A DNA stretch of 64,000 bases from Thalia democratica. Lineage: Eukaryota. The stretch is taken from positions 23,374,001 to 23,438,000 of the forward strand of contig OZ241830.1 of the NCBI GenBank assembly GCA_965202585.1, in the 5' to 3' direction. Made by a program: the position numbers and the translations under genes. This document shows positions 1,939 to 19,500 of this stretch, piece after piece (the stretch's first letter is position 1; each line of letters begins with the position of its first letter). Under the pieces are notes generated by a model. The model was not told the DNA's origin. It did not search any database and saw only the letters and a program-made list of their open reading frames with translations.

Positions 1939-2038
1939 NNNNNNNNNNNNNNNNNNNNNNNNNNNNNNNNNNNNNNNNNNNNNNNNNNNNNNNNNNNNNN
2001 NNNNNNNNNNNNNNNNNNNNNNNNNNNNNNNNNNNNNN
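1939..2038. other. Assembly gap (100 N)
   Basis: Run of exactly 100 N, probably a placeholder, so the true gap length is unknown. Confidence 0.99.
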
Positions 2039-6122: not shown

Positions 6123-6760
6123 CTATACTACAACCCCCTATTTAGCTCAACATCAAAAACCAAATTAGAAATATAATTTCTAAAGTTAGTAGATAAACAC
6201 TTCCCTAAAAACGGACCTCTCAATAAAATTCTGAACAGAAACACAATCAAAATAAGATACTCATGTATGCCCAACGTAGAATCCGAAATTAGCAAATCAA
6301 ATCTTAAAATCATAGAGGAAATGCCAGAAGAAAAATGAAACAACTTGCAATTGCAGAATTAGAACCTCATGTCCAGTGGAAGGCAAATGCCTTCCCAGAA
6401 GTGTTATATACAAAGCTACGGTCAAATATAATAACAAAGAACATCATTATATTGGATCCACCGCAAGAAAATTTAAATTAAGATACAATGACCTTATGCA
6501 TAGCTTCAGAAATAAAAATCTGAGAGAATCGACGAAACTGAGCTCTTCCATTCAGACCGCCAAGTTCAACAAAGAGATGATCAAGAAAAACGTCAAATGG
6601 AAGATAATGCATAAAATTAATCAACGCCAAAATTTGCTACCTGTGCAATGTAAAAAGACTGGAAATAGCATTTGCTGGCAAAAAATCATCATCCCTTAAC
6701 TCCAGAACTGAGTTAATTGGCAAATGCAGACCCTTCGCTAAATTTTATTTAAAATCATAG
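6123..6760 (+). mobile_element. Penelope-like retroelement remnant: RT C-terminal linker, Cys knuckle and GIY-YIG endonuclease, disrupted
   Basis: Conceptual translation YYNPLFS...FLKLVDKHFP...LNKILNRNTIKIRYSCMPN, then CNCRIRTSCPVEGKCL..SVIYKATV...YIGST..KFKLRYN, ending in LNSRTELIGKCR. These are characteristic PLE 3' ORF motifs. Stops at ~6174 and ~6337 and frameshifts indicate decay. Includes ORF 6376..6699. Confidence 0.88.
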
Positions 6761-7090
6761 CATTGTCATGTCCGTATTTGCAAGTTTTATAAGTTTGTTG
6801 CTATTGTGCTTGAATTTTCATTGTATTATTATTCTATTTGTATTTCCATTTATTTATTTTGTTTATTATTTTTGTATACCATATCCAATAATTTTTTTTC
6901 AATAAATTTTATCTAACTCCCGTTATTACTTGAATGATAGCTCTTTAATAACTATTAAATTGGCAATTAAGAATTTTGGATTTTTTTTCTTAATTTAACA
7001 AACTCATTTAATTTAATCAGTTTTAATTAGAATATAGTTAGTGACGATTATTAGCACCTAATAATAGTATATATGGCTTTGTCTGTCTTA

Positions 7091-7143
7091 CTTTATAGAG
7101 TTTTTAAATCGTTATCATTGCGTTAGCATGAAACACTGTGTAG
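7091..7143 (+). ncRNA. Degenerate minimal hammerhead-ribozyme-like motif at the PLE 3' end (probably inactive)
   Basis: CTTTATAGAGTTT pairs imperfectly (9/13) with AAACACTGTGTAG as stem III; TGC-GTTA-GCA hairpin forms stem II, followed by TGAAAC. The catalytic CUGAUGA box reads GTTATCA. PLE terminal repeats are known to carry minimal hammerheads. Confidence 0.35.
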
Positions 7144-10100
7144 AATAAATACTCTTAATTTGAAATTGTCTAATTAATGAGACTTATATTAGCCAAGTTT
7201 TTAAAAATATTTGAAATTTTAGAAAAAATTAAAAATAACTTGTAGGTGTTAATAAGACTTACATACGTACTTTTATTTATACATTACTTTTTAAGCTATT
7301 TTACTTAATTTTTTTTAAGATTTCGAATTTAATTAGTCGTGCAGCCCCTTAATTGATACTATTCTAGTAATTATATCTAAGGAAAACTTGATGTAGGCAG
7401 GTAGCTTTTCAGTTGGCAGGAAACAACAACATTCGCATTGTTTGATCGTATTTTTATAAATAAACGTAGAAAAAATAAATAAAACTATTTAAAGGAAATT
7501 TAAAATTACACAATCACAAAATAAAAATTATTTTATACTGAAGTGCAGTTTTAGAGTCTAGGTTAAATCTATTTGAAAACAACTGAAACGTACCGACATA
7601 AAATCTACTTTACACGAGTGTCAATTTATTGATATTCGTAGTTGCTAATATTTTATCAATATAATATACAATTCAATAATATTTGGTAAATTATTTATAT
7701 TTTTATCAGTACTATTTATTATGATTTAGCATGCGTCTAAATCTTTCTGTATGTTTTCTAAACAAGATTTATTTCGTTTACTTAATAACGTTTGTTAATA
7801 TATGCTTTTAAATATATTATTTGCTTTAATTTTTAGATAAAAAAGTTATTGAAAACATTGTTTAAAGTTAAAAGCTAGTGAAATAGGTGTTTTACTAAAA
7901 CATAAGTAATCAAAAGACAAAAGTCTTAAAACATAAGTTTATGGTTAAACAATATTCTCTTAGGAATACAATGTACATGGTTTGTAAAAGTACATGTGAA
8001 AATTCTAACACTAAATTTTTGTTTGATTGAAGTCAGTTATGCATGTAATTAGTTGTAAAGCTTTTCTTTTTAGATTTATTGAATTTTAATTTGTGAAGAT
8101 TAAATTACCTTTTAATAAAACTCTCCTAACAACTTGATTTTCTAAATATCTGTTTCCAAACTTTATTACTTTAGTTGTATTAAGTACTATACAAACTATT
8201 ACAAATTTGTTTGAAAGTTTAGTATTGTATAATTTTCAAAATAAAAAGTACCGTGTGAAATGGTTTTCATGTAATTATAATAAGCTTGCATTCTTTAGAT
8301 TAGTTATCAAATAGTAATTAAAATATCAATGAAACTATTGTAGTTAAATGCTTTCTTGAAAGTATTTTAAAGTAATTATACTGTAAAAACCCAAATCACT
8401 TCCATGAATAAGTTTATTGTTTTGTTTGTAACCGATAAACCTAAACAAAAAAATTTTTTTTTTGCTTTTATGTTAAAAATTTCAAAATTTTCTATTACTG
8501 CATGCTACCGGCTAAAGTGTAGTGATTTGTTCTATTAAACTAGTCAAAAGTTAATATGGAAAAACAAAATAAAATGTAAACTCCTCATTTTAAATACAGT
8601 TTATAATAAATGATTAACTAAGTTTTTATAATTTAATAATAGTTTAAGAAAATTTAGAAACTTAATAAATCTTAACTCGTTTTATATTGAAGTTTACTTT
8701 GAAAAATTTGGGAATATTTGTATTATTATTTTTTGTATACAACAACACAGTTCTTTTTAACTTGTTGTGGGTCCTTTTTAACGAGTGGTATTAGGGGCAG
8801 GAAAATATTTTTAGACGTCGTTCTTTTGCACGAAGGGTAACTTTTACGTATTATAATAAAAAAATATATCTATATTGTTTGTAAAATGTATAATAAATTG
8901 AAAACAACTTATAGGCTGAACAAGTACAACCAAATTTATAACTTTTATTGCTTTGAATATGTTTATTGAGTAAATAAGATTTCTTTTTTATAAAGTTAGT
9001 ATAAAATATTACATTTTTTAAACAAAAAAAATACTTTTTTTAACAGCCATGTTCCAAACGATAAACACTTGTAGTTAATACTAACTCAGATTGGAATTAA
9101 AAACTTTGTCTTTCCCTTACTTATATTAGTGTTTATAGGTTGGAGCTTGAGTAAAAAATTAAATTTAGCTTTAAAAAAAGTTATTTTTGATTGAATGTCC
9201 ACTTAACTTTTTAATTTAGCACTTTTAAAACTTAGTTACATTCTTATCAAAACTTTTTACGTTTTGTTGTTTAAGGAATCATTTACAACTTTACAAACTT
9301 ATAAAAACAAAACTTTTGCAGGGTTTTATTTATTGTTAATACTATAAATAAGAAAAAGATTTGAACTCTTTTTTACAAAGGTGAAATTTTTAAAACAAAT
9401 CTTTAAATTTCTTTTACGAGACCAAAAAATTAGAAAATAAAAAACTTAATAAATTTGCTTTTTAACTCTTATTTTAAATATAAATGATGTATAAATTACA
9501 ACTAATAACTAAGTTAAATATCAACGTTGAATGTATAGTATTTGGAAGCCTTTAAACTCATACAATTGTTTTGCAAAGTTTGCAAAAAATAATTGTATTA
9601 AAATATACAAACATTTTTATCTTTTGTCAAACTTAAAATAAATTGCAAACAGCTTATAACTTGACTTGATTTGTATATTTTAAATATATTTTGCTAAAAA
9701 TATGTTTATTAGTTAATATAAGAAGTTAAAATTTGTTTTTTTGATTGAAAAAATAGATAATTACAAAAAAAGTGTTTAAAATTTAAATACAAATAATAAG
9801 ACATCATGCATTGCTAAATTCTATTAGTACTTTAAAAGTAAATAATCTGTTCTTTATAACTTCAAATAAACTATTAAAATGAAAAGAAAAACATAAAAGT
9901 TGTTTTTAAACCGCCATCTCATAATTTTAAATTTTTTTAATTTATTTTTTTAACCAAGATGAGAATTAAAAATTTTTCTTTGCTGTAATTACTTTAGTTG
10001 TGATTAGAAATTCAAGTTATGTAACTAAAAATAATACTTTTGAATAAATGGCAACTTAACTTTATAATTTAGGAAGTTTTACTCTAGATTATATTCTTAA

Positions 10101-10553
10101 TTATCATTTTTCTACGTTTTGTTGTTTAAGTAAGCAGTAAGAATTCTAAATATCAAACAGTTTGTGAATATTCAAAACAAAAAAATTATAAGGTTTGATT
10201 AATTATTAGTACTATTAAAAAAATGTATAATTTCTTGCTTACGTAATTAACTTAGTATTAATTAATCCATTTTCACTAGAGTTCGTAAGGAAAAAATAAG
10301 TAAATTATCAAATGATTTTAGGTTGATTTAAGTATTGTCTTAAATTATCAAAGATGTTAAAATACCTAATACAAAAAAGTACTTAGATAGTTTTTTGATT
10401 TATTTGTAAATCCGAAGTTGTATACAAAATCTAGTCAACAGCTAAAATATTTCATGAAATTCTCATTTAAAGAAATGAACTTTGTTTTGTTTATAGTGCA
10501 AAAACTTTTATTATATTAAATATTTATTTAGATATTTAGAATATCAACTAAAT

Positions 10554-11261
10554 ATGAATTCAAATGAAGAAAATAAGCTTCCTTATAGACAAGTTATTCA
10601 TCATTTTTGTGTTTTCCAATTTGTAAGATAAAATTTTACTACAAAGTTTATGTTAGTTGAATTTAGTATCAAACCATAAATAATCAAATGCAAAACCGTT
10701 GTTGTTTAAGTACTTAACTTACAACTTAGGTAACTAAAAAGGATTATTTGGATAAAGAGAAAGCAGTATTTTGGGGATTTTCTGAAGTTTACCCTTATCT
10801 AGTTGATGTTTTGAAACAGCTCGATTCAGGAAGGTTGTTGATATAATAAACATTAACATTATTAGAATATCATACTTTTCTGGTTAACTTGGAACTTCTT
10901 GGAACTTTTAAATACATTTAAACATACTTATATATATATATGTATTATATACATTATACAGTATTACCTGACTTGAAGTTATTCAAACTTAATATAACTA
11001 ATACATATTCATTATGAAAAATAATACAAATTGAAAACTATACAAAAATTTGAGTTTTTAATTTCTCATCATCTTCGCAGTATTGATGACACTGAAGTAG
11101 TGTTGAAAGTCTTGTTACTCCTACAAGTACACCCAAATCTAATTGACCTCTTCATAAAAACTTTCTTACCTAAAGGATTTATTGAGGTTTTCCAATTTAA
11201 ATTTAAAATGTATAATGTCATTTTTTGCATGAAAAATAAGTTAATTAAAGTTTTCAACTGA
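10554..11261 (+). CDS. Sin3-type PAH-domain micro-gene/module 1 (exons 10554-10592, 10730-10833, 11081-11261; ~107 aa)
   Basis: Spliced phases 0 and 2 are compatible and give MNSNEENKLPYRQ-VTKKDYLDKEKAVFWGFSEVYPYLVDVLKQLDSGS-IDDTEVVLKVLLLLQVHPNLIDLFIKTFLPKGFIEV..., matching the Sin3 PAH1 pattern YLDxVKxxF...VY..F.DI.KxFxSxSID..GV..RV..LF.GHP.LI..FN.FLP.G..IEV. Acceptors ACTTAG and TCGCAG; donors weak (GTTATT, GTTGTT). Exon 3 may instead splice out at 11187. Confidence 0.62.
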
Positions 11262-11576
11262 CAAAATACTAAAAACTGTTGTATAATTCACGTGAACAAC
11301 TCAGTTCAAACCCGCAATCAATTTTTACCCTATCAGATCCGATAACTGCTTACCGACCAAGGGTAAGGTAACCAAGAGAGAAAAAAAAATAAGAAAAAAT
11401 ATTGAGTAGGAATTGTGCGTGGATCAGAATTGTGCGGGAGGGAACTGTAAGTGTTCCACAATTAACATGTATACAAACGTATTTTGAAGTTTTAATTTTT
11501 TTAAACAATTTAATAAGCTGTATAAGTGCTGTGTAAAATTTATAAACAAAACAAAAATTAAGTACTATATTAAAAG

Positions 11577-12562
11577 CGTATTAACCAACAACCAAACGAT
11601 GCTAAATCGAATATTATCCACTTTTAAATGAGGGCACCATCAAATGATCAAGTTGTTCCACAGGCCAACCAACAAGAACGTGAAAACAAACAAGAACAAT
11701 TGAGTCGTGATAAAGTGGTTAGCTTTTTGATATTTCAAAACTATTTATTTTCTTCACAAAACTAAGTTTGTTCAAAATAACTAGGTTTTAAAGATTTTTA
11801 ATTTGTTTGCATGTTTGAAAGTAAATATAAGTGTGTCACTTTTGCTTGATTAACTGTTCATTTAACAGTTCAACTGTGGTGTAGTTTATGAAAATATAAA
11901 AATATAAAAAATGCGTTTCGTTCAAGACCTGAAGTTTACGAAGAATATATAAAGACTACGCGGAAGTTTTTAATAAAAAAGTAAGAAAAGTAAAATAAAT
12001 ATATTTTATTAGATATACAATATTGGAAATGAAAATTTCATATTTTAATTGTTTTAAATGAAAAAATGTAAAAAAGTAAATGTACAAAAAGTTAATTTTA
12101 ATAATTTAAATAAAAATTGCCCAAATAAACTGATTTTAACTTAATTATTTTTTGAGAAATTTAAAATTAATAAAATTAATTTATATTTAACTAACTTTTA
12201 AAGAATAACTTGTTTATTAATAAACAAATTTAAACAGATGAATCACTATAATTTACGTACAGTATTTCAAAAACTAGTTTTATAAAGTTTTAAAACCTTT
12301 TTGTAATTACTTTGTTTCCTCAAGAAAGTTATTTAAAACTTTGTAAGTCACAATTTTAACAAATTCTGTCAGTATTCAAACATTTTTGCTTATTGAAAAA
12401 CTTTTAGTTATTATATTTGCAGTAAAATAACCCAAATTAATTAAATGAAGGATTGGCGACATTGAATTCTACAAGCAGGTCTTACTACTTTTTCAAGGTC
12501 ACCCAGAGCGGATTACGCGTTTTAATTCATTTCTACCAAAAGGATTATCTATCCATGTTTGA
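11577..12562 (+). pseudogene. Sin3-type PAH module 2, disrupted (exons 11577/11628-11717, 11869-11980, ~12423/12451-12562)
   Basis: After removing an 8-bp tandem duplication (AAAAATAT, ~11898-11905), the exons read ...RDKV-FNCGVVYENIKNAFRSRPEVYEEYIKTTRKFLIK-KIGDIEFYKQVLLLFQGHPERITRFNSFLPKGLSIHV*, resembling Sin3 PAH (EFNHAINYVNKIKNRF..P.IY / LF.GHP..I..FN.FLP.G). Donors GTTAGC and GTAAGA. There is an in-frame TAA at 11625, and the stronger TGCAG acceptor at 12422 is out of frame. Confidence 0.65.
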
Positions 12563-15500
12563 CGATTTAAGTTTGAAATAAGTATTGTCAACCTAAATAA
12601 AATAGTAAATAAGTTATATTAAAGTTTATTACCTTAAGTAGAATAACTTTTGATTTATGTTCATTTGTGAAAGCTTAATTTCAAGTTTTGAAAGAACTTT
12701 TAATCAGAACATAAATTGTATTCGTACACTTTAAACAGATAATTTGTTTCACTAAAGTGTAATTTTGGTTTTGTCTTCTTGCGAGCTTAAGTTGATATTT
12801 TTAATCAACTTGTAATTCACATATATCTATAGTTAAAAAAGATATATATTAATTTGTCAAATTTTTATTTAAAAAAATGCATGACATAAAAAAGTTTAAA
12901 CTAACTGATACTCTTTTTAAATCGTATGATTAAACAATGCAAACCACGGAATTATCAGGAAGTAATTCTGCACGAACATTTTAACAATCTAGGAGAAGAA
13001 AACCGTTCTCAACTTCAAATCACGACATCTGATAGTGTTCACGTAATCTGGCAAAAACAACTAACAAGTGACAAAATAGAACAACATAACATTCAACAAT
13101 AATAACAATCTGTCTAATAATGTTCATCTACGAAACGTTATGTTTCCTTGTTTGTTCATTTGTAAACATTGAAATAGTTTTATACTTTACCAATTTTTGG
13201 TGCTTTCCAATTTTTGGTGCTTTCAAGAACAATATAAACATCTATTTAAAAGTTCTGTTAAATGATTAAGAGTAAGAAAATGTAATGCTTTAATCTAAGA
13301 CTGTATTTGTTGTTGTTTTAAGATATGATACGGATACGCATCATTTCAGTTATGTATGTTTTTATGTTTTCTATAGCAGTATTTTGATAACTTACAATTT
13401 TTTTAATGTTTGTTGTTGCATCAGCTGTTTTATTTAATGCACTCAAATAGTTATACTACTAATATTTTGTTTTATTATTTCTTATTAACTGTATTATACT
13501 TAATATAAGTTTTCCTTTGTAATACACTTCGTAATTTTTGTATCTTTATAAAAATAAATAAAATCTGCTCGTATTATTGTCTTATTAATAACTTTAAGAT
13601 TACTTTTATCATATACTAATTTAGAGTTTAATGACAGCCAAATTTTCTTAAAAACCGAAAACGCAATAAAATTAAAGCAAATACAACTTCTAAATTATAA
13701 GATAAAGCTACTTGTTGTTTTAAGTAACCAGTTTTACTGATTTTTACGTTTTTGTTTTGAACGGGAAACAATGTTTCGAAACTAACTTTAAGACAAAAAT
13801 CTAATTCTTTCAAATAAGTAATTGAATTTGTTGATAGTTTTTTAAGGGGCCTTTCACATTGATACCTAGTTTATTAATTAGAGGTAAAAATTTAAATCAT
13901 GATTATGAACTTGGAACAATGTTTAGCTAATGTAGATTTATCTACTTGTACATAAAGCTATTTTCTACATTTAATTAAAACTTTGCTTGCATGTTCTTCA
14001 TCAACTTTATTAATTTATTTTGCACGTATATGTCGTAAATTTTAAATTAGCGAAATACAGTATGGTACAAAATTGTAGCCAAGAAAAATTAAGCCAAAAA
14101 ATACCCTAATTAACAGGATCAATTTTAGACTGTACCTTTTACAACTTATTAAACTACACTTATTTATATTTTGGCAATATGTTTTGTTTCGAGTTGGTGG
14201 CAAAACAATGTACATAATGGCTAAACTATTATTGGGTAGTAAAATATAAGGATAAAAGTCAATAAATACCCTTTGGTATTGGTAAAACAATCTAATTTAT
14301 AAACAGATCACAGAAAATATAAAACTTTTACTTTTTTTTTTGCTAAATATGAATGTAGTTTAAAAAAGGTTATTTTCAAATACTTCGTCAATTAAAGTAT
14401 ATAAAATTATTACTATTTGAGAAAATATAGTTCAGTTAGAAAAAATTTAATGTTATAATCTTAAACCTTGTTCTATGTGTTTTATTTAAACTTAAAAAAT
14501 ACTATGTTTGATAAACACTGTCAAACATTTTTGTTAAAATGCCGTTAAATTAAATAGATTTACAATGTGGAACATGGTTTTTGCATTCTATCTGCATTAT
14601 AACCTGAAAAAATAAAATATATTTTGTTTTTTGCAAATAGAATAGATTAGAAATATTAAAAACTATTTGTGGCAAACCGAAAATAATGACAAAGAAATAA
14701 AGAATTATGTAGTAATATTGCACCACAAGAACCTATAACTAATTTATCAACTCTCGAATATTTAGCGAGACTTAATAAAATAACTCTTATAAAGAGTTGT
14801 CAGTTTGTGATGCATAACCTATACACAGAATATCTTTTTAATTCGAAAACCTATTTTTTTTATAATTTCTTTTATAAAAGTTTGAAAACACAAGTTTAAA
14901 GGACAAATTGGTACTTACTGCTGGTGCTCATAGTAGATTGAGGTTTTTGTAGCCAATGCTTGCAGTAATGAAATTAAGAAAGATGCTTAACACTTTTATT
15001 AGTTTTAATATTGCTTTTTACATTTATGTGACAATCGTAGGGTATGTAAATGTCAGTTGCACTGTTTTTTTTATCTAAATTTTGAATGGCTTTCTAAGTC
15101 TTTTCATTACGTTGTTTAAATAATTGGCTACGCAAACTTAAATTGCACTATTTGTTTTTTTCAGTAAATAAATAATTTCTAATATGCTTGTTTTATATAT
15201 TGGTATTGTTCTATTTGTACGTTCATAAATTATTTTCTACTTCCTTTAGTTTTTATTTTATTACATTTGATACGATAAAACTTCTTTTGTACATAATTTG
15301 TTTGAATTATTACTTTTAGGTTTGTTGCACTTCGTTTGTTCGGCTAAACAGTGCCGGCAGTTCGTACCTAGGAAGTGTGGGTTAGTGTACTTGGTTTAAA
15401 GTCCCAATGGACGAAAATTTAAAACTGATATTCATAAAGTGCTACACAAAGGTCTACTAAATTGATATTGCCTACTGAGGGTAACATTTACATGCTAGGA

Positions 15501-15959
15501 ATTTTTTTTTTTGAATATAATGTTATACTTAACTTTTTAAATCGTTACAAACCAGTTTAGTACTACTTTTTCACTTTTAAATATGCTCTAAGTTTTACCA
15601 AAATAGTATTTTGTTTATGTTTTCTATCCATATTTAAATTAACCATTTTTGTTTAAGATAGAACTTTTGTTTTGTTGCCAATAAAAGTATTTAAAGTAAA
15701 TCGGATTATAACCCTGTTTTAATGGGTCTCGATTTAAGAAACCTGCATACTTAAGTAACTGTTATAATTCTAAACAAAAATAGTCCTAAGCCGCCAAAAA
15801 CTTTACTAATTAGGATTTTGAAAAACAACAAAACGCTAAATTAAAACCATATGCACTAATTAAGTAGTTTAATAATAAATAAGTAAAATTTTTATCACAA
15901 CATTTTCATACAACTTTTTTAATTCAATTTTTTTTATAGGCAAATTATATAGTTATATG

Positions 15960-16125
15960 CTTTCGTTTTAAATTTCTGAAAACAAGCTTCACATAAAAAG
16001 GATGTAATACAAATTGATTGCTTTTTCTATTGGTTTTTATACGCAAGAAGCTAAAATAATGAAAAAGGGTTAAAACTGCTTAAGCAGCGCCGAAATCTTT
16101 TCATACAATTAAACTTGAGTGCAAC
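15960..16125 (+). promoter_or_regulatory. Conserved proximal upstream region of Ly6 copy 1
   Basis: Motifs GGATGTAAT.CAAATTGATT, ATTGG (reverse CCAAT), TTAAG(C/T)AGCGCCGAA and TGCAAC-ATG are shared with the upstream regions of the other two copies. Confidence 0.55.
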
Positions 16126-16554
16126 ATGAACTTCTTAGTAATTCTCACATTTTGCTCGAGCTGCTTATTTGTCAGTTGTGCCGGTTTAAGATGCTACGAA
16201 GGCAGAAACATAGGGTTCGAATCGAATGAAACCATCGAAGAGTGCAGCGACCCTTACATGGACTTTTGTGTAACTGCCACATTCAGGAACGGCGAAGTGC
16301 CAAAGTACACGTGCGGGGAGCAGGAGTTTTGCACGACGAAACGCTGCTACAACACCGACTACTGCAAGGAACCGGGCACCTTCGAACGTGACTACCTCAG
16401 AAAGGACAACGTGAAGTTCACGATGACTTGCTGCGACACGGATTTGTGCAACGATGAAAATATTCCAAGTTCAGCAAAATCTCTTGACAAAATTTGTTTC
16501 AGCTGTTTATTTTACATAAGTCTTTTTATTTGTTCGTATTTTGTTATATTTTAA
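16126..16554 (+). CDS. Ly6/uPAR (three-finger, LU domain) protein, predicted GPI-anchored, copy 1, 142 aa, intronless
   Basis: Hydrophobic signal peptide ending CAG|LRCYE; 10 Cys ending in the canonical CCDTDLCN; small-residue omega region (SSA) and a hydrophobic C-terminal tail without a cytoplasmic segment; AATAAA at 16676. Confidence 0.95.
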   Translation: MNFLVILTFCSSCLFVSCAGLRCYEGRNIGFESNETIEECSDPYMDFCVTATFRNGEVPKYTCGEQEFCTTKRCYNTDYCKEPGTFERDYLRKDNVKFTMTCCDTDLCNDENIPSSAKSLDKICFSCLFYISLFICSYFVIF

Positions 16555-19500
16555 ACTTGTTTTTGCTTTTCAACTGGTCATTTTTAAAAACATCAATAAC
16601 AATTTATTAAAACAACTTCAAAGTACCGGACATTAAAATATTCTATAACAATATGAGTAGAGCAGTTAAAGATTTAATAAACAAGTTTTCAATCAATACA
16701 AAAGTTTATAGTTATATAACCGGTAAAAAATAACATTATACTAATTTAGATTTTAGCAGATTGAAACTTTGTATGCATAGCGAGGTGAATTTTTAAAATT
16801 TTTCATGACTTTAAAAGATTAAACTCAAATACTCAAAAAACTTTTATTTTCATTCAACAAACTATGTTAGAATAAGTTGAGCAGATATTTTTGACTTTAA
16901 GTTTGTTTTTCACACGTATTGTTGATGTTTCAATTTTATACAAGTATGTTTTAATAAATATGAAGCAATAAATAAACGACCATAATTTCAACTTAATAAA
17001 TTATTTATTTCAAAATCTTAAATTTAGGCATATCTATTGAATAGTTTCCTTTAATATTGTATACTAATGTTTTGATACGTTTCATTATTTTTAAAGGGAA
17101 ACAAGTCACACAGTAAACAAATTTTCTTAATAATCTATAATTGAAAGTATTTGATAGTATTTGATTTTATAATAGTCTAAGTTTGTGACTGTTGAATTTT
17201 CAAAAAAAAACAGAGAAAGTTCTTAAAAAATAAAAATTGTTAAACTTTATGTAGTAGCTCTTATAAAATGTGTTTGCTCTATGCATTTTTTATCATAAAT
17301 ACCTTTGTTTTAGAAATACAAATAAAGCAAATTAAACATATATTTTAATTATTTTTGCTTTTAACAGCTTGTAGATGTTTATAAGAAATAAAATATTAAA
17401 TTTTAGTGATAAAAAATAACTCTTAATACTGTTTTTTTAAATTTTTTTAACAAAATTTTAAAATAGATTCAATAGAGTGTTTTTGGAACATTTTTTGGCT
17501 AATAATTTTTAGAGTGTTTCTTAAAATCTAGTAAATAAAAGTGTTTCCTGGCATAAGAGGACCATGTTCTATTATTTTTTAATCTACTAAGTCTAACGAT
17601 TTAAAAAACATTGTCATATATAAAACTTGCTCGTGCCAGATACTTTTATTTTAAAAAGTTTACTAGAATATTATTAAAAAAAAAAAAAAATTTCAACAAT
17701 ATTTTTTTTCAATTTTAATTTTTTATTTTTTATTTGACAGTTAGTTAAAATATTTTTCAATAATGAAAAGTAATAAGATACTTTAATGTTAAAGTCGTTT
17801 TTTAATATATATTTATTTTAAAAGGCAACAAATTTTTAACTAATCAAAAACCCTTAAAGCCACTTCGTGCCAACTAATATAACTTATGTTGTATATGAAA
17901 TTGTTTAGTTTGCAGCACTATATGCGCTATAACTTTGGCTTTCTACCCACAAATTTTAAAGAGATTATCTATTTTGTTTTTTGCTATTTCCAGTTGCGGG
18001 CTCACTGTGTGTAACGAAAGCCCGGAACGTCACTTTTGCACGAACTTTAACCGTTACAATTTGTAATAATTTTGCACGAGCTGTTATAAATTAGTTTTTC
18101 GTAAAACGTTGGTTTCAAATAAATTTAAAATAGTTTACTAATCGTTTTCAAATTGGACTTTTCTGATCAATTTTTGATAAGTTCGCGCGAAATTGACGTT
18201 TGAGTTTCTGACACCTACCCATTTAAAAAAGTAGGTATAAGTTTAACATTCTATTTTTAATTATTTCCGTTATAACTTTTTAAGTAGCACAAACAATTAC
18301 TACATCTGCTTTATTTTCAATTTTTTACTTACTAACAATTTGAACTTGTTATCTATTTTAACTTAATATGAATAAAAAGAACGACTAAGCCTAATAAAAT
18401 ATTAAATATAAACTTAAATTTTTATGTGCTCATACTATTGTAAAATTTAATGAATACTTTTTAAAGTTTGGTATCTACTAGTTTAATTACAGTAAGTTAC
18501 AAAGATAAAACATTAAAGTATTCATTTTGATGATATTTACAAAAATTAAAATAGTACCTATAACAAAGTATTTCAAGGTTGAAGTTTAGATGTTGTTATT
18601 GAAAATTTACCACAGTATTTTATTACTTCGTTATCATTAAAAAAAAAGTAGAATTTAAAATGTTTTTTAACAATAAACATTAAACAACTTACCTTGAAAA
18701 ATTAAAAAATATAAAATTTTTAGTTGAATGTATTGTTTCTAAAATTTATTATTGTACTATATAGTATTTTGTAAAACTTAGCAAACGTAATAAAGTACTT
18801 TAAAATTTATTTTGAATTACGTTTATTGTCTCATAATATTGTCCATTAAATGTAATTAAATGTTATAAAATGTATTTTCTTTAACTAGTCTACGAAAACC
18901 ACAGTTTGATTTATGCTATAAGAGGAAAATAACTTGCAATCAAAAGCTTATAAAAGTTTTAACGAAAACTATGAAATAAAACTAAACTATCGTTTCAAAT
19001 CTTAAGTTTTCCAGTAAAATTTTCAATTAAATACGGATTATCTAACTTTCACAAGCATAATCATATTTAATTATGTAATTAATTTTTTACCGGAAAATTT
19101 AAGCTTTAAAACGATTGTTTAGTTTTATTTCGTATGACAGTCTTCGTTAAAATTTTTACAAGCATTTGCTATAATTAATTAACGTGTTACAAGTTATGTA
19201 AATCTTTTACTCGAAGTTTAAATTTAGTAAAAACCTAATATATATCTAGTATGCACATAATGAAATATAAAAGTTTAATTTAATAAGTTTTTTAAAGTAA
19301 TTCCGATTAAGCTATGCAACTTCATGAAAATTATCAGAAAATTACGTGATAGTGATTAGGAAAAAATATTTTCAATACAAATTTTTCTTAGAAGTCTACT
19401 AAAAATGCCGCGGGCCGGATATATTGATTAAACACAAATTTGTATTAAATTGATATTTTCTAATTGCTATCACGTACAAAACAAAAAAAAACAAACTAAT

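What the first reader, a model, noticed from the sequence alone, without database searches (positions are those of the whole stretch)
10554..12562. Hidden Sin3-derived PAH-only gene(s): two tandem PAH modules without the rest of Sin3
Seen: small exons, mostly absent from the ORF track, splice into two PAH-like domains. Each is split at the equivalent position by a phase-2 intron and each ends in FLPKG, suggesting module duplication. Module 1 is open as a ~107-aa protein; module 2 is frameshifted. I found no HDAC-interaction domain or C-terminal Sin3 sequence downstream; a weak ITTSDSVHVI match to the post-PAH1 segment lies at ~13015-13050. Known: PAH domains bind SID helices of repressors such as Mad/Mxi1 and REST. 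Inference: a lineage-specific PAH microprotein could act as a decoy for Sin3 recruitment, or this is a decaying partial Sin3 duplicate.
Basis: partly seen in the sequence, partly recalled or inferred. Interest (0 to 1): 0.72.

Follow-up and report, generated by a model that had tools for sequence, protein, structure and literature searches.

The report
Decaying Sin3-derived double-PAH1 gene copy
The two hidden PAH modules are real, but they look like one eroding copy of a salp-specific gene built from the first exons of the co-repressor Sin3, and not like a proven working decoy protein.

Summary
Window 10554-12562 carries two PAH-like modules. Each is split by a phase-2 intron at exactly the place where the genome's true Sin3 gene (C6:3.34-3.364 Mb) splits PAH1. 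Spliced, they score 39 and 47 bits against a profile of the genome's other PAH1-like modules; the best of 10,000 shuffles scores 12.

Both modules derive from PAH1. They are most simply read as one former gene of about 250 codons with two PAH1 domains, not as two genes.

In this copy the second half is dead. An in-frame TAA lies at 11625-27, and an 8-bp tandem duplication (11894-11909) shifts the frame. Module 1 is still open (99 aa if spliced, 107 aa if read through).

Four sister copies exist (C6:26.475, C6:26.484, C5:65.452, C5:65.446 Mb). All have a broken module 2, each lineage through different lesions. Module 1 is intact only here and in one other copy.

Since this copy split from its 92%-identical partner, exons have diverged no more slowly than introns (9.0% against 5.9%).

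Best reading: a pseudogene in progress (0.6). A live PAH1 microprotein remains possible (about 0.25).

The genome holds at least 22 further PAH1-type exons, several in intact two-module loci without an HDAC-interaction domain. Notes from this scan held no earlier Sin3 or PAH finding.

The parts
10554..10592 (+). e1: start codon plus 13 codons; donor GT at 10593. Weakly resembles the start of Sin3's pre-PAH1 exon.
   Evidence: Conserved in copies B (95%) and C (81%). tblastn against the Sin3 pre-PAH1 exon gives E 0.02.
10730..10833 (+). e2: first half of PAH module 1. Begins with a Val codon, like the Sin3 PAH1-N exon, and ends in phase 2 (AG|gt).
   Evidence: 43% identity to Sin3 PAH1-N over 28 aa, E 6e-5; for the Sin3 boundaries.
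11081..11186 (+). e3: second half of PAH module 1, ending FLPKGFIE, with the family-conserved donor GAG|GT at 11187. Without splicing, the frame runs on to the stop at 11259-11261 (107 aa).
   Evidence: Pfam PAH 16.0 bits, E 0.01.
11294..11368 (.). Short interspersed repeat inserted in the e3-eA' intron. It is absent from copy C at this place. It is not part of the gene.
   Evidence: More than 30 genome matches at 75-87% identity; no tRNA found.
11577..11717 (+). eA': linker exon (acceptor AG at 11575-76, donor GT at 11718).
   Evidence: In all five copies conservation begins exactly at this AG. The frame is open at this codon in copies B, C and D'.
11869..11980 (+). eB: first half of PAH module 2, broken by an 8-bp tandem duplication (11894-11901 and 11902-11909). 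This gives a stop at 11905-07 in the incoming frame.
   Evidence: With one copy of the duplication left out, the frame is continuous.
12451..12562 (+). eC: second half of PAH module 2, ending FLPKGLSIH. The family donor is at 12557 (CAT|GT); the read-through stop is TGA at 12560-62.
   Evidence: Pfam PAH 18.5 bits, E 0.0016. The best solved matches are Sin3 PAH1 structures 2rmr, 2czy and 2cr7.
12959..13102 (+). eP: putative last exon (acceptor AG at 12957-58, stop at 13100-02), at the position of Sin3's post-PAH1 exon.
   Evidence: Inference only. The block is conserved in copies B and C and at C6:26.53 Mb. It is in frame with eC. It is not significant against Sin3 itself.

Best explanation
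The stretch is one unprocessed, partly dead copy of a lineage-specific gene made from the 5' exons of Sin3. The genome is that of an AT-rich pelagic tunicate; earlier notes of this scan suggest a salp.

How it arose (inferred): a DNA-level partial duplication copied four Sin3 exons: pre-PAH1, PAH1 first half, PAH1 second half and post-PAH1. The last three were then duplicated in tandem. The result was a gene of about 250 codons encoding two PAH1 domains and no PAH2, PAH3, HDAC-interaction domain or C-terminal region.

This gene was later copied by segmental duplication to five places: A (the window), B and C (C6:26.47-26.49 Mb), and D and D' (C5:65.445-65.454 Mb).

In the window copy, the linker exon has acquired a TAA and the first exon of the second PAH has an 8-bp slippage duplication. 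Only the first PAH1 module can still be translated (99 aa spliced, 107 aa read through).

Shown: the anatomy, the derivation from PAH1, the lesions, the sister copies, and the lack of exon-specific conservation since the last duplication.

Inferred: that module 1 is open merely because no disabling mutation has yet hit it, and that the locus no longer has a selected function.
For: 1. Identity and origin.
- Half-domain Pfam hits and spliced-module scores far above shuffles.
- 43% and 34% identity to Sin3 PAH1 against 20-21% to PAH2.
- PAH1 structures are the best solved matches.
- Exon starts, intron position and phase, and the terminal GAG|GT donor are the same as in the true Sin3.

2. One former gene. 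Conservation of the linker exon starts at an AG 51 bp upstream of the supposed second ATG in all five copies, and its frame is open there in B, C and D'. C2:71.03 Mb has the same layout, N-C-post-N-C-post.

3. Decay. Module 2 is broken in all five copies, differently in each lineage:
- A: 8-bp duplication plus TAA.
- B: TAA plus a 12-bp deletion.
- C: acceptor AG changed to AC, plus a 5-bp insertion.
- D and D': a shared 1-bp deletion, plus a TAA in D and loss of an acceptor in D'.
Module 1 is lost in B (acceptor AG changed to TG, and a 758-bp deletion), in D and in D'.

4. No constraint since the A/B split.
- Exonic divergence is 9.0% and non-exonic 5.9%.
- A versus B has 7 synonymous and 15 non-synonymous differences, omega 0.53, not distinguishable from 1 by my own rough estimate.
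- With C as outgroup, the A lineage has 3 synonymous and 8 non-synonymous changes, and the clearly dead B lineage has 2 and 5.
- The A-lineage changes include V to E at a conserved helix-1 position and F to L.
- For the third exon, C versus D gives omega 1.4.

5. Not carried by a transposon. The flanks are shared only with the sister segments.

6. No transcript evidence. No RNA run holds the stretch, and no matching protein is in the 5.8-billion-protein collection.
Against: - Module 1 has an intact start codon, four intact splice sites and 83-107 open codons in a genome where stop codons are very frequent.
- The comparison with copy C (dS about 0.67) gives omega 0.50 overall and 0.31-0.36 for the third exon. 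The gene was therefore under purifying selection for part of that time.
- The lesions in A and B are all different, so their common ancestor was probably still intact and possibly functional.
- A has fewer lesions than B, and none in module 1.
- Absence of RNA holders is weak evidence. No reads could be laid, so neither expression nor the reality of the 8-bp duplication was checked.
- The A/B comparison covers only 125 bp of module 1, because B has lost the rest.
Confidence: 0.6

Rival explanations
1. Module 1 is a live gene for a 99-107-aa stand-alone PAH1 protein. The loss of the second half is a truncation that left a working single-domain product. That product binds SID-type amphipathic helices of repressors without bringing HDAC, so it acts as a competitor or adaptor.
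For: - Open frame and intact splice sites.
- Omega of 0.3-0.5 against copies C and D.
- FLP motif and hydrophobic helix pattern retained; 39 bits against the family profile.
- The A/B ancestor was apparently intact.
- Other family loci are intact.
- Known precedent: the SIN3B(293) isoform has PAH1 and PAH2 only, does not bind HDACs, and still represses (PMC5902990).
Against: - No exon-specific conservation since the A/B split.
- Non-synonymous changes on the A lineage at conserved core positions.
- GC3 of 0.29 against 0.57 in Sin3 PAH1.
- Its third exon matches no solved PAH by sequence.
- No RNA holder.
- A transcript with a stop followed by several introns would be expected to be a target of nonsense-mediated decay (my inference).
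Confidence: 0.25
2. The 8-bp duplication is an assembly error or a segregating allele. Module 2, starting at the ATG at 11628, is then also an intact small PAH gene, and the locus holds two live tandem PAH microprotein genes, as the reader first pictured.
For: - The duplication lies in a low-complexity A/T tract that is prone to slippage and to consensus errors.
- With one repeat copy removed, the frame is continuous.
- Module 2 has the higher PAH scores.
- The TAA at 11625-27 would lie outside a gene that starts at 11628.
Against: - All four sister copies also have a broken module 2, through other lesions.
- Conservation upstream of the ATG back to an AG argues for an internal exon, not a first exon.
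- A versus B divergence in eB and eC equals that of the introns.
Confidence: 0.08
3. The PAH likeness is due to chance or to a gene fragment carried around by a transposable element.
For: The single-exon Pfam scores are below the curated cut-off. Short interspersed repeats lie nearby.
Against: - Spliced modules score 39-47 bits against 12 bits or less for 10,000 shuffles.
- Exon boundaries and phases are identical to those of Sin3.
- The flanks are single- or low-copy and shared only with the sister segments. The repeats are small insertions and do not carry the modules.
Confidence: 0.03

Closest known systems
Sin3 (SIN3A/SIN3B) co-repressor, PAH1 domain
   Same: Sequence family (Pfam PAH). 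Closest to PAH1, including the solved PAH1 structures 2rmr, 2czy and 2cr7. Same exon boundaries and the same phase-2 intron as the genome's own Sin3 gene. Same FLP motif followed by ...IEV at the exon end.
   Different: No PAH2, PAH3, HDAC-interaction domain (PF08295 is found only at C6:3.35 Mb) or C-terminal region. Two PAH1-type domains in tandem instead of PAH1-PAH2-PAH3. Much lower GC3. Partly disabled.
SIN3B short isoform, SIN3B(293)/SIN3BSF (PMC5902990)
   Same: A product with PAH domains only and no HDAC-interaction region. It shows that such a protein can exist and still affect transcription.
   Different: That isoform comes from alternative splicing of the Sin3b gene and carries PAH1 plus PAH2. 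Here the PAH-only units are separate duplicated genes with PAH1 plus PAH1, and this copy is eroding.
Unprocessed (duplicated) pseudogenes in segmental duplications
   Same: Introns are retained. The copy lies in an inverted segmental duplication (window 9492-17742 against C6:26470001-26477458, 86-92% identity). Sister copies carry independent frameshifts, stops, splice-site losses and deletions. Exons and introns diverge at the same rate.
   Different: One of the two domains is still open, and the parent of the copies was itself a derived gene, not Sin3 proper.
GON4L / YY1AP1 (the other animal proteins with PAH repeats; PMC13212936)
   Same: PAH repeats outside Sin3.
   Different: Large proteins with SANT and other regions and with PAH exons that are not split this way. 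A contiguous PAH hit at C9:11.35 Mb may be this gene, but that was not examined.
Small PAH-only genes of plants (Arabidopsis 'PAH2 superfamily' genes)
   Same: Families of short proteins that consist of PAH domains only, some in tandem arrays.
   Different: Recalled from memory only; my paper search did not retrieve a description. Plant lineage, of independent origin.

Membership tests
Pfam PAH (PF02671) | Match to the curated profile at or above the gathering score (21.3 bits) | tested here: inconclusive
   Each exon holds only half a domain: 16.0 and 18.5 bits for the second halves, and nothing reported for the first halves. The spliced peptides have no reference and were not typed in, so the curated profile was not run on them.
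Pfam PAH (PF02671) | Full-length similarity of the spliced domain to bona fide PAH domains, beyond chance | tested here: met
   Local profile of 11 other PAH1-type modules, including Sin3 PAH1: 39.1 and 46.8 bits. Sin3 PAH1 alone: 29.0 and 34.5 bits. The best of 10,000 shuffles scores 12.4 and 9.2 bits.
Sin3 PAH1 (as opposed to PAH2 or PAH3) | Closer to PAH1 than to PAH2; short helix 2-3 loop; PAH1 intron position | tested here: met
   43% and 34% identity to PAH1 against 20% and 21% to PAH2. Solved PAH1 entries score E 7e-5 to 4e-3, and PAH2 entries 0.09 to 0.2. The intron has the same position and phase as in Sin3 PAH1, whereas Sin3 PAH2 is split elsewhere.
Sin3 co-repressor (full-length orthologue) | HDAC-interaction domain (Sin3_corepress, PF08295), with PAH2 and PAH3 in the same gene | tested here: not met
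   PF08295 matches only C6:3349897-3350409. No PAH2-type exon lies in window 9000-15000.
Functional protein-coding gene | Uninterrupted reading frame with usable splice sites | tested here: inconclusive
   Met for module 1. Not met for the linker exon (TAA at 11625-27) or for module 2 (8-bp duplication).
Functional protein-coding gene | Purifying selection (exons slower than introns; dN/dS below 1) | tested here: not met
   Since the A/B split, exons have diverged 9.0% and non-exonic DNA 5.9%. Omega is 0.53 on 22 changes, and the A and B lineages look alike. The older comparison of A with C gives 0.50, which points to past constraint only.
Functional protein-coding gene | Transcription and correct splicing | not testable with these tools
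   No RNA run holds the stretch.

The most novel reading that the evidence does not exclude
This pelagic tunicate has evolved a family of stand-alone Sin3-PAH1 proteins, mostly with two PAH1 domains and without any HDAC-binding part. There are at least 22 PAH1-type exons at about 14 places. The window's open module 1 would be a live, truncated member. Such proteins would bind the SID helices of DNA-bound repressors and uncouple them from Sin3/HDAC, acting as a lineage-specific layer of anti-repression or as adaptors.
Probability: 0.25. Interest if true: 0.65.

Novelty: new variant of a known kind. Interest (0 to 1): 0.4.

Why it matters
For the window itself, the result is mostly a clean-up. 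The hidden gene is an eroding duplicate and should not be annotated as a working Sin3 decoy without RNA evidence.

The wider point is that one animal genome has copied the PAH1 exons of Sin3 many times. Several two-domain copies are open and spliceable, although they share only 30-45% of their residues with Sin3 PAH1. I found no report of PAH-only gene families in tunicates or other animals.

If the intact members are expressed, they would be natural competitors for the PAH1 docking site used by SID-bearing repressors. They would also be a ready-made set of diverged PAH1 domains for studying binding specificity.

Tried and rejected
- **Reads.** Neither splicing nor the 8-bp duplication could therefore be checked.
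- Local scripts inside the closed sandbox did handle window stretches that include those letters, as mafft or blast subjects. Two meaningless chance matches touched them. The last script left them out.
- **Sequencing runs.** The look-up of sequencing runs listed three runs, none on record as RNA.
- **Protein searches.** The search for homologous proteins found nothing with the third-exon open frame of module 1 or with a C8 family member. The length window and the exact-word requirement make these blanks weak.
- **Further genome DNA.** The other family loci were studied only on their 3-kb pieces.
- **Curated Pfam profile, structure prediction and complex prediction on the spliced peptides.** Left out: a spliced peptide has no reference and I did not type it.
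- **Module 1 third exon against solved structures.** No PAH hit.
- **Tree of 15 modules.** Unresolved, apart from A with C module 1 and the four C8 copies. Sin3 PAH1 sits at the centre with a branch length of zero.
- **PAH2 origin of module 2.** Considered because of the FN..V.Y.N.IKN start, and rejected on identity, loop length, intron position and solved-structure ranking.
- **Transposon carriage.** Rejected.
- **tRNA origin of the intronic repeat.** Not found.

Full report
**What is there.** The window is G000:C6:23374001-23438000 of an 802-Mb genome; the window itself is 29% G+C. Earlier notes of this scan take the organism to be a pelagic tunicate, probably a salp; I did not test that.

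Spliced, the first three exons give an open peptide. The next three give a PAH-like peptide interrupted by a frameshift.

Pfam PAH matches the two second-half exons at 16.0 and 18.5 bits, below the 21.3-bit cut-off because each exon holds only half a domain. Spliced peptides have no reference, so I tested them locally. Against a profile built from 11 other PAH1-type modules of this genome, they score 39.1 and 46.8 bits. Against the true Sin3 PAH1 alone, they score 29.0 and 34.5 bits. The best of 10,000 shuffles scores 12.4 and 9.2. The PAH identity is therefore secure.

**Relation to Sin3.** The true Sin3 gene lies at C6:3.34-3.364 Mb on the minus strand. It has PAH1, PAH2, a PAH3-like part, and the only HDAC-interaction domain in the genome.

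Its PAH1 is encoded by two exons. The first starts with a Val codon after an AG and ends CAA AG|gt (phase 2). The second starts cag|C ATC and ends ATT GAG|GT. Both window modules have these same boundaries and phases.

Module 1 is 43% identical to Sin3 PAH1 and 20% to PAH2. Module 2 is 34% and 21%. The second-half exon of module 2 finds solved PAH1 domains (2rmr, 2czy, 2cr7) ahead of PAH2 domains. Sin3's own PAH2 has a long loop and is split elsewhere. Both modules therefore descend from PAH1.

**One gene, not two.** Aligning the five sister copies shows that conservation of the exon holding the supposed second start codon begins 51 bp upstream, exactly at an AG (11575-76). The frame is open through that stretch in copies B, C and D'.

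The third exon of each module ends at a conserved ...ATT GAG|GT-type donor in phase 0: 11186|11187, and 12556|12557 (CAT|GT in this copy). The simplest model is a single ancestral gene of about 250 codons:
- e1 10554-10592
- e2 10730-10833
- e3 11081-11186
- eA' 11577-11717
- eB 11869-11980
- eC 12451-12556
- eP 12959-13102 (weakly supported last exon)

Its layout would be short leader, PAH1, linker, PAH1, tail. The locus at C2:71.03 Mb has the same order: N-half, C-half, post-PAH1-like exon, then N-half, C-half, post-PAH1-like exon, all open and with matching splice sites.

It is not significant against this genome's Sin3. However, the block is conserved in copies B and C and at C6:26.53 Mb. 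Other family members carry a recognisable post-PAH1 exon at that relative position.

**State of the window copy.**
- The linker exon has an in-frame TAA at 11625-27. Copy B has TGT AAA there.
- eB carries an exact 8-bp tandem duplication (11894-11901 and 11902-11909) that shifts the frame. Leaving one copy out restores a continuous PAH frame.
- Module 1 alone remains translatable: 99 aa if e3 splices to eA', and 107 aa if e3 reads through to 11259-61.
- The e3-eA' intron holds a short interspersed repeat with more than 30 relatives in the genome.

**Sister copies.** Window 9492-17742 is one arm of an inverted segmental duplication with C6:26470001-26477458, at 86-92% identity. The duplication also includes the neighbouring three-finger genes.

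| Copy | Place | Module 1 | Module 2 |
|---|---|---|---|
| A | window | intact | TAA in linker exon; 8-bp duplication in eB |
| B | C6:26.475 Mb | e2 acceptor lost (AG to TG); 758-bp deletion removing e3 | in-frame TAA and 12-bp deletion in eB |
| C | C6:26.484 Mb | intact | eB acceptor lost (AG to AC); 5-bp insertion |
| D | C5:65.452 Mb | e1 and e2 not recognisable | 1-bp deletion in the FLP region of eC (shared with D'); TAA in eB |
| D' | C5:65.446 Mb | e3 truncated | same 1-bp deletion in eC; eC acceptor lost |

 No further members of this sub-family were found. The flanks are not high-copy, so these are segmental duplicates and not transposon cargo.

**Selection.**
- A against C for module 1: 22 synonymous and 52 non-synonymous differences, dS 0.67, omega 0.50. 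For the third exon alone, omega is 0.31-0.36 against C and D. The gene was constrained for part of its history.
- C against D: omega 1.4.
- A against B: exonic divergence 9.0%, non-exonic 5.9%. Over e1, part of e2, eA' and eC there are 7 synonymous and 15 non-synonymous differences, omega 0.53.
- Polarised with C: the A lineage has 3 synonymous and 8 non-synonymous changes, and the dead B lineage has 2 and 5. The A-lineage changes include V to E at the conserved helix-1 position of YLDxVK, and F to L in helix 2.
- GC3 is 0.29-0.30 here against 0.57 in Sin3 PAH1.
- All lesions differ between A and B, so their ancestor was probably still intact.

By my own rough estimate from the indel and substitution rates seen between A and B, an open module 1 after that much neutral time has a chance of about one in four or five. 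Openness is therefore only weak evidence of function.

**Expression.** No RNA run holds the stretch. No matching protein exists in the large protein collection. Expression is untested.

**The wider family.** The PAH profile hits 33 exons in the genome. The Sin3 PAH1 second-half exon finds 22 non-Sin3 relatives, and the first-half exon finds 9.

Open, spliceable units lie at:
- C2:71.03 Mb (two modules)
- C8:27.52 Mb (two modules)
- C5:13.81 Mb, together with C137 (two modules)
- C8:57.42-57.52 Mb (four one-module copies, 92-96% identical, omega 0.3-0.8)

 None is near an HDAC-interaction domain. These exons stay open at only 30-45% identity to Sin3 PAH1 in a very AT-rich genome, which suggests that some members are maintained by selection. 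A tree of the modules is a star, with Sin3 PAH1 at the centre.

I found no description of such a family in tunicates or other animals. The nearest functional precedent is the SIN3B(293) isoform, which has PAH1 and PAH2 only, does not bind HDACs, and still represses (PMC5902990).

**Verdict.** The best reading is a pseudogene in progress inside a lineage-specific double-PAH1 family (0.6). The rivals are a live truncated PAH1 microprotein (0.25), a second module that is intact because the frameshift is an artefact or an allele (0.08), and chance or transposon carriage (0.03).

Noticed in passing
L001:2068-2136 (C6:3.362 Mb) and L015:1084-1396 (C6:3.357 Mb): Inside the introns of the true Sin3 gene lie partial copies of exon edges. 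One copies the start of the PAH1 second-half exon (DTPGVIQRVS...). Three copy the 3' end of the PAH2 first exon (...SLSESEVYNQ).
   Followed up: partly
window 9492-17742 and C6:26470001-26477458 (L033): Inverted segmental duplication, 86-92% identical and 3.1 Mb apart, that also carries the neighbouring three-finger-protein genes. An older tandem copy (C) and an upstream block (window 7860-9500, 79% identical) lie next to the distal arm.
   Followed up: partly
window 7000-7180 and 11294-11368: Two short interspersed repeats. One is about 180 bp, with 40 or more copies at 84-92% identity. The other is about 75-110 bp, with 30 or more copies at 75-87%. The second sits in the intron between the two PAH modules. 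No tRNA was detected in it.
   Followed up: partly
L014 (C5:9764124-9767210, minus strand): A 327-codon open frame that starts with a PAH second-half-like segment (...DLLKDHPDLIIEFN) and runs into a long tandem repeat of NQVPE/DQFPELN-type units. This may be a PAH exon fused to a repeat region.
   Followed up: no
C9:11347821-11347949 (L002) and C1:95279619-95279717 (L005): PAH-profile hits that are not split by the PAH1 intron, probably other PAH-bearing genes (GON4L-like?). The one on C1 lies near a copy of the 75-bp repeat.
   Followed up: no
window 6376-6699: A 107-codon open frame with a weak DUF6686 match (18 bits, below the cut-off). Its YIGST...R...H-like pattern hints at a mobile-element remnant.
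   Followed up: partly
It lies in the intron between e2 and e3, and I worked beside it.
   Followed up: no
window 1939-2038: A run of 100 N (assembly gap or masked). Left untouched.
   Followed up: no
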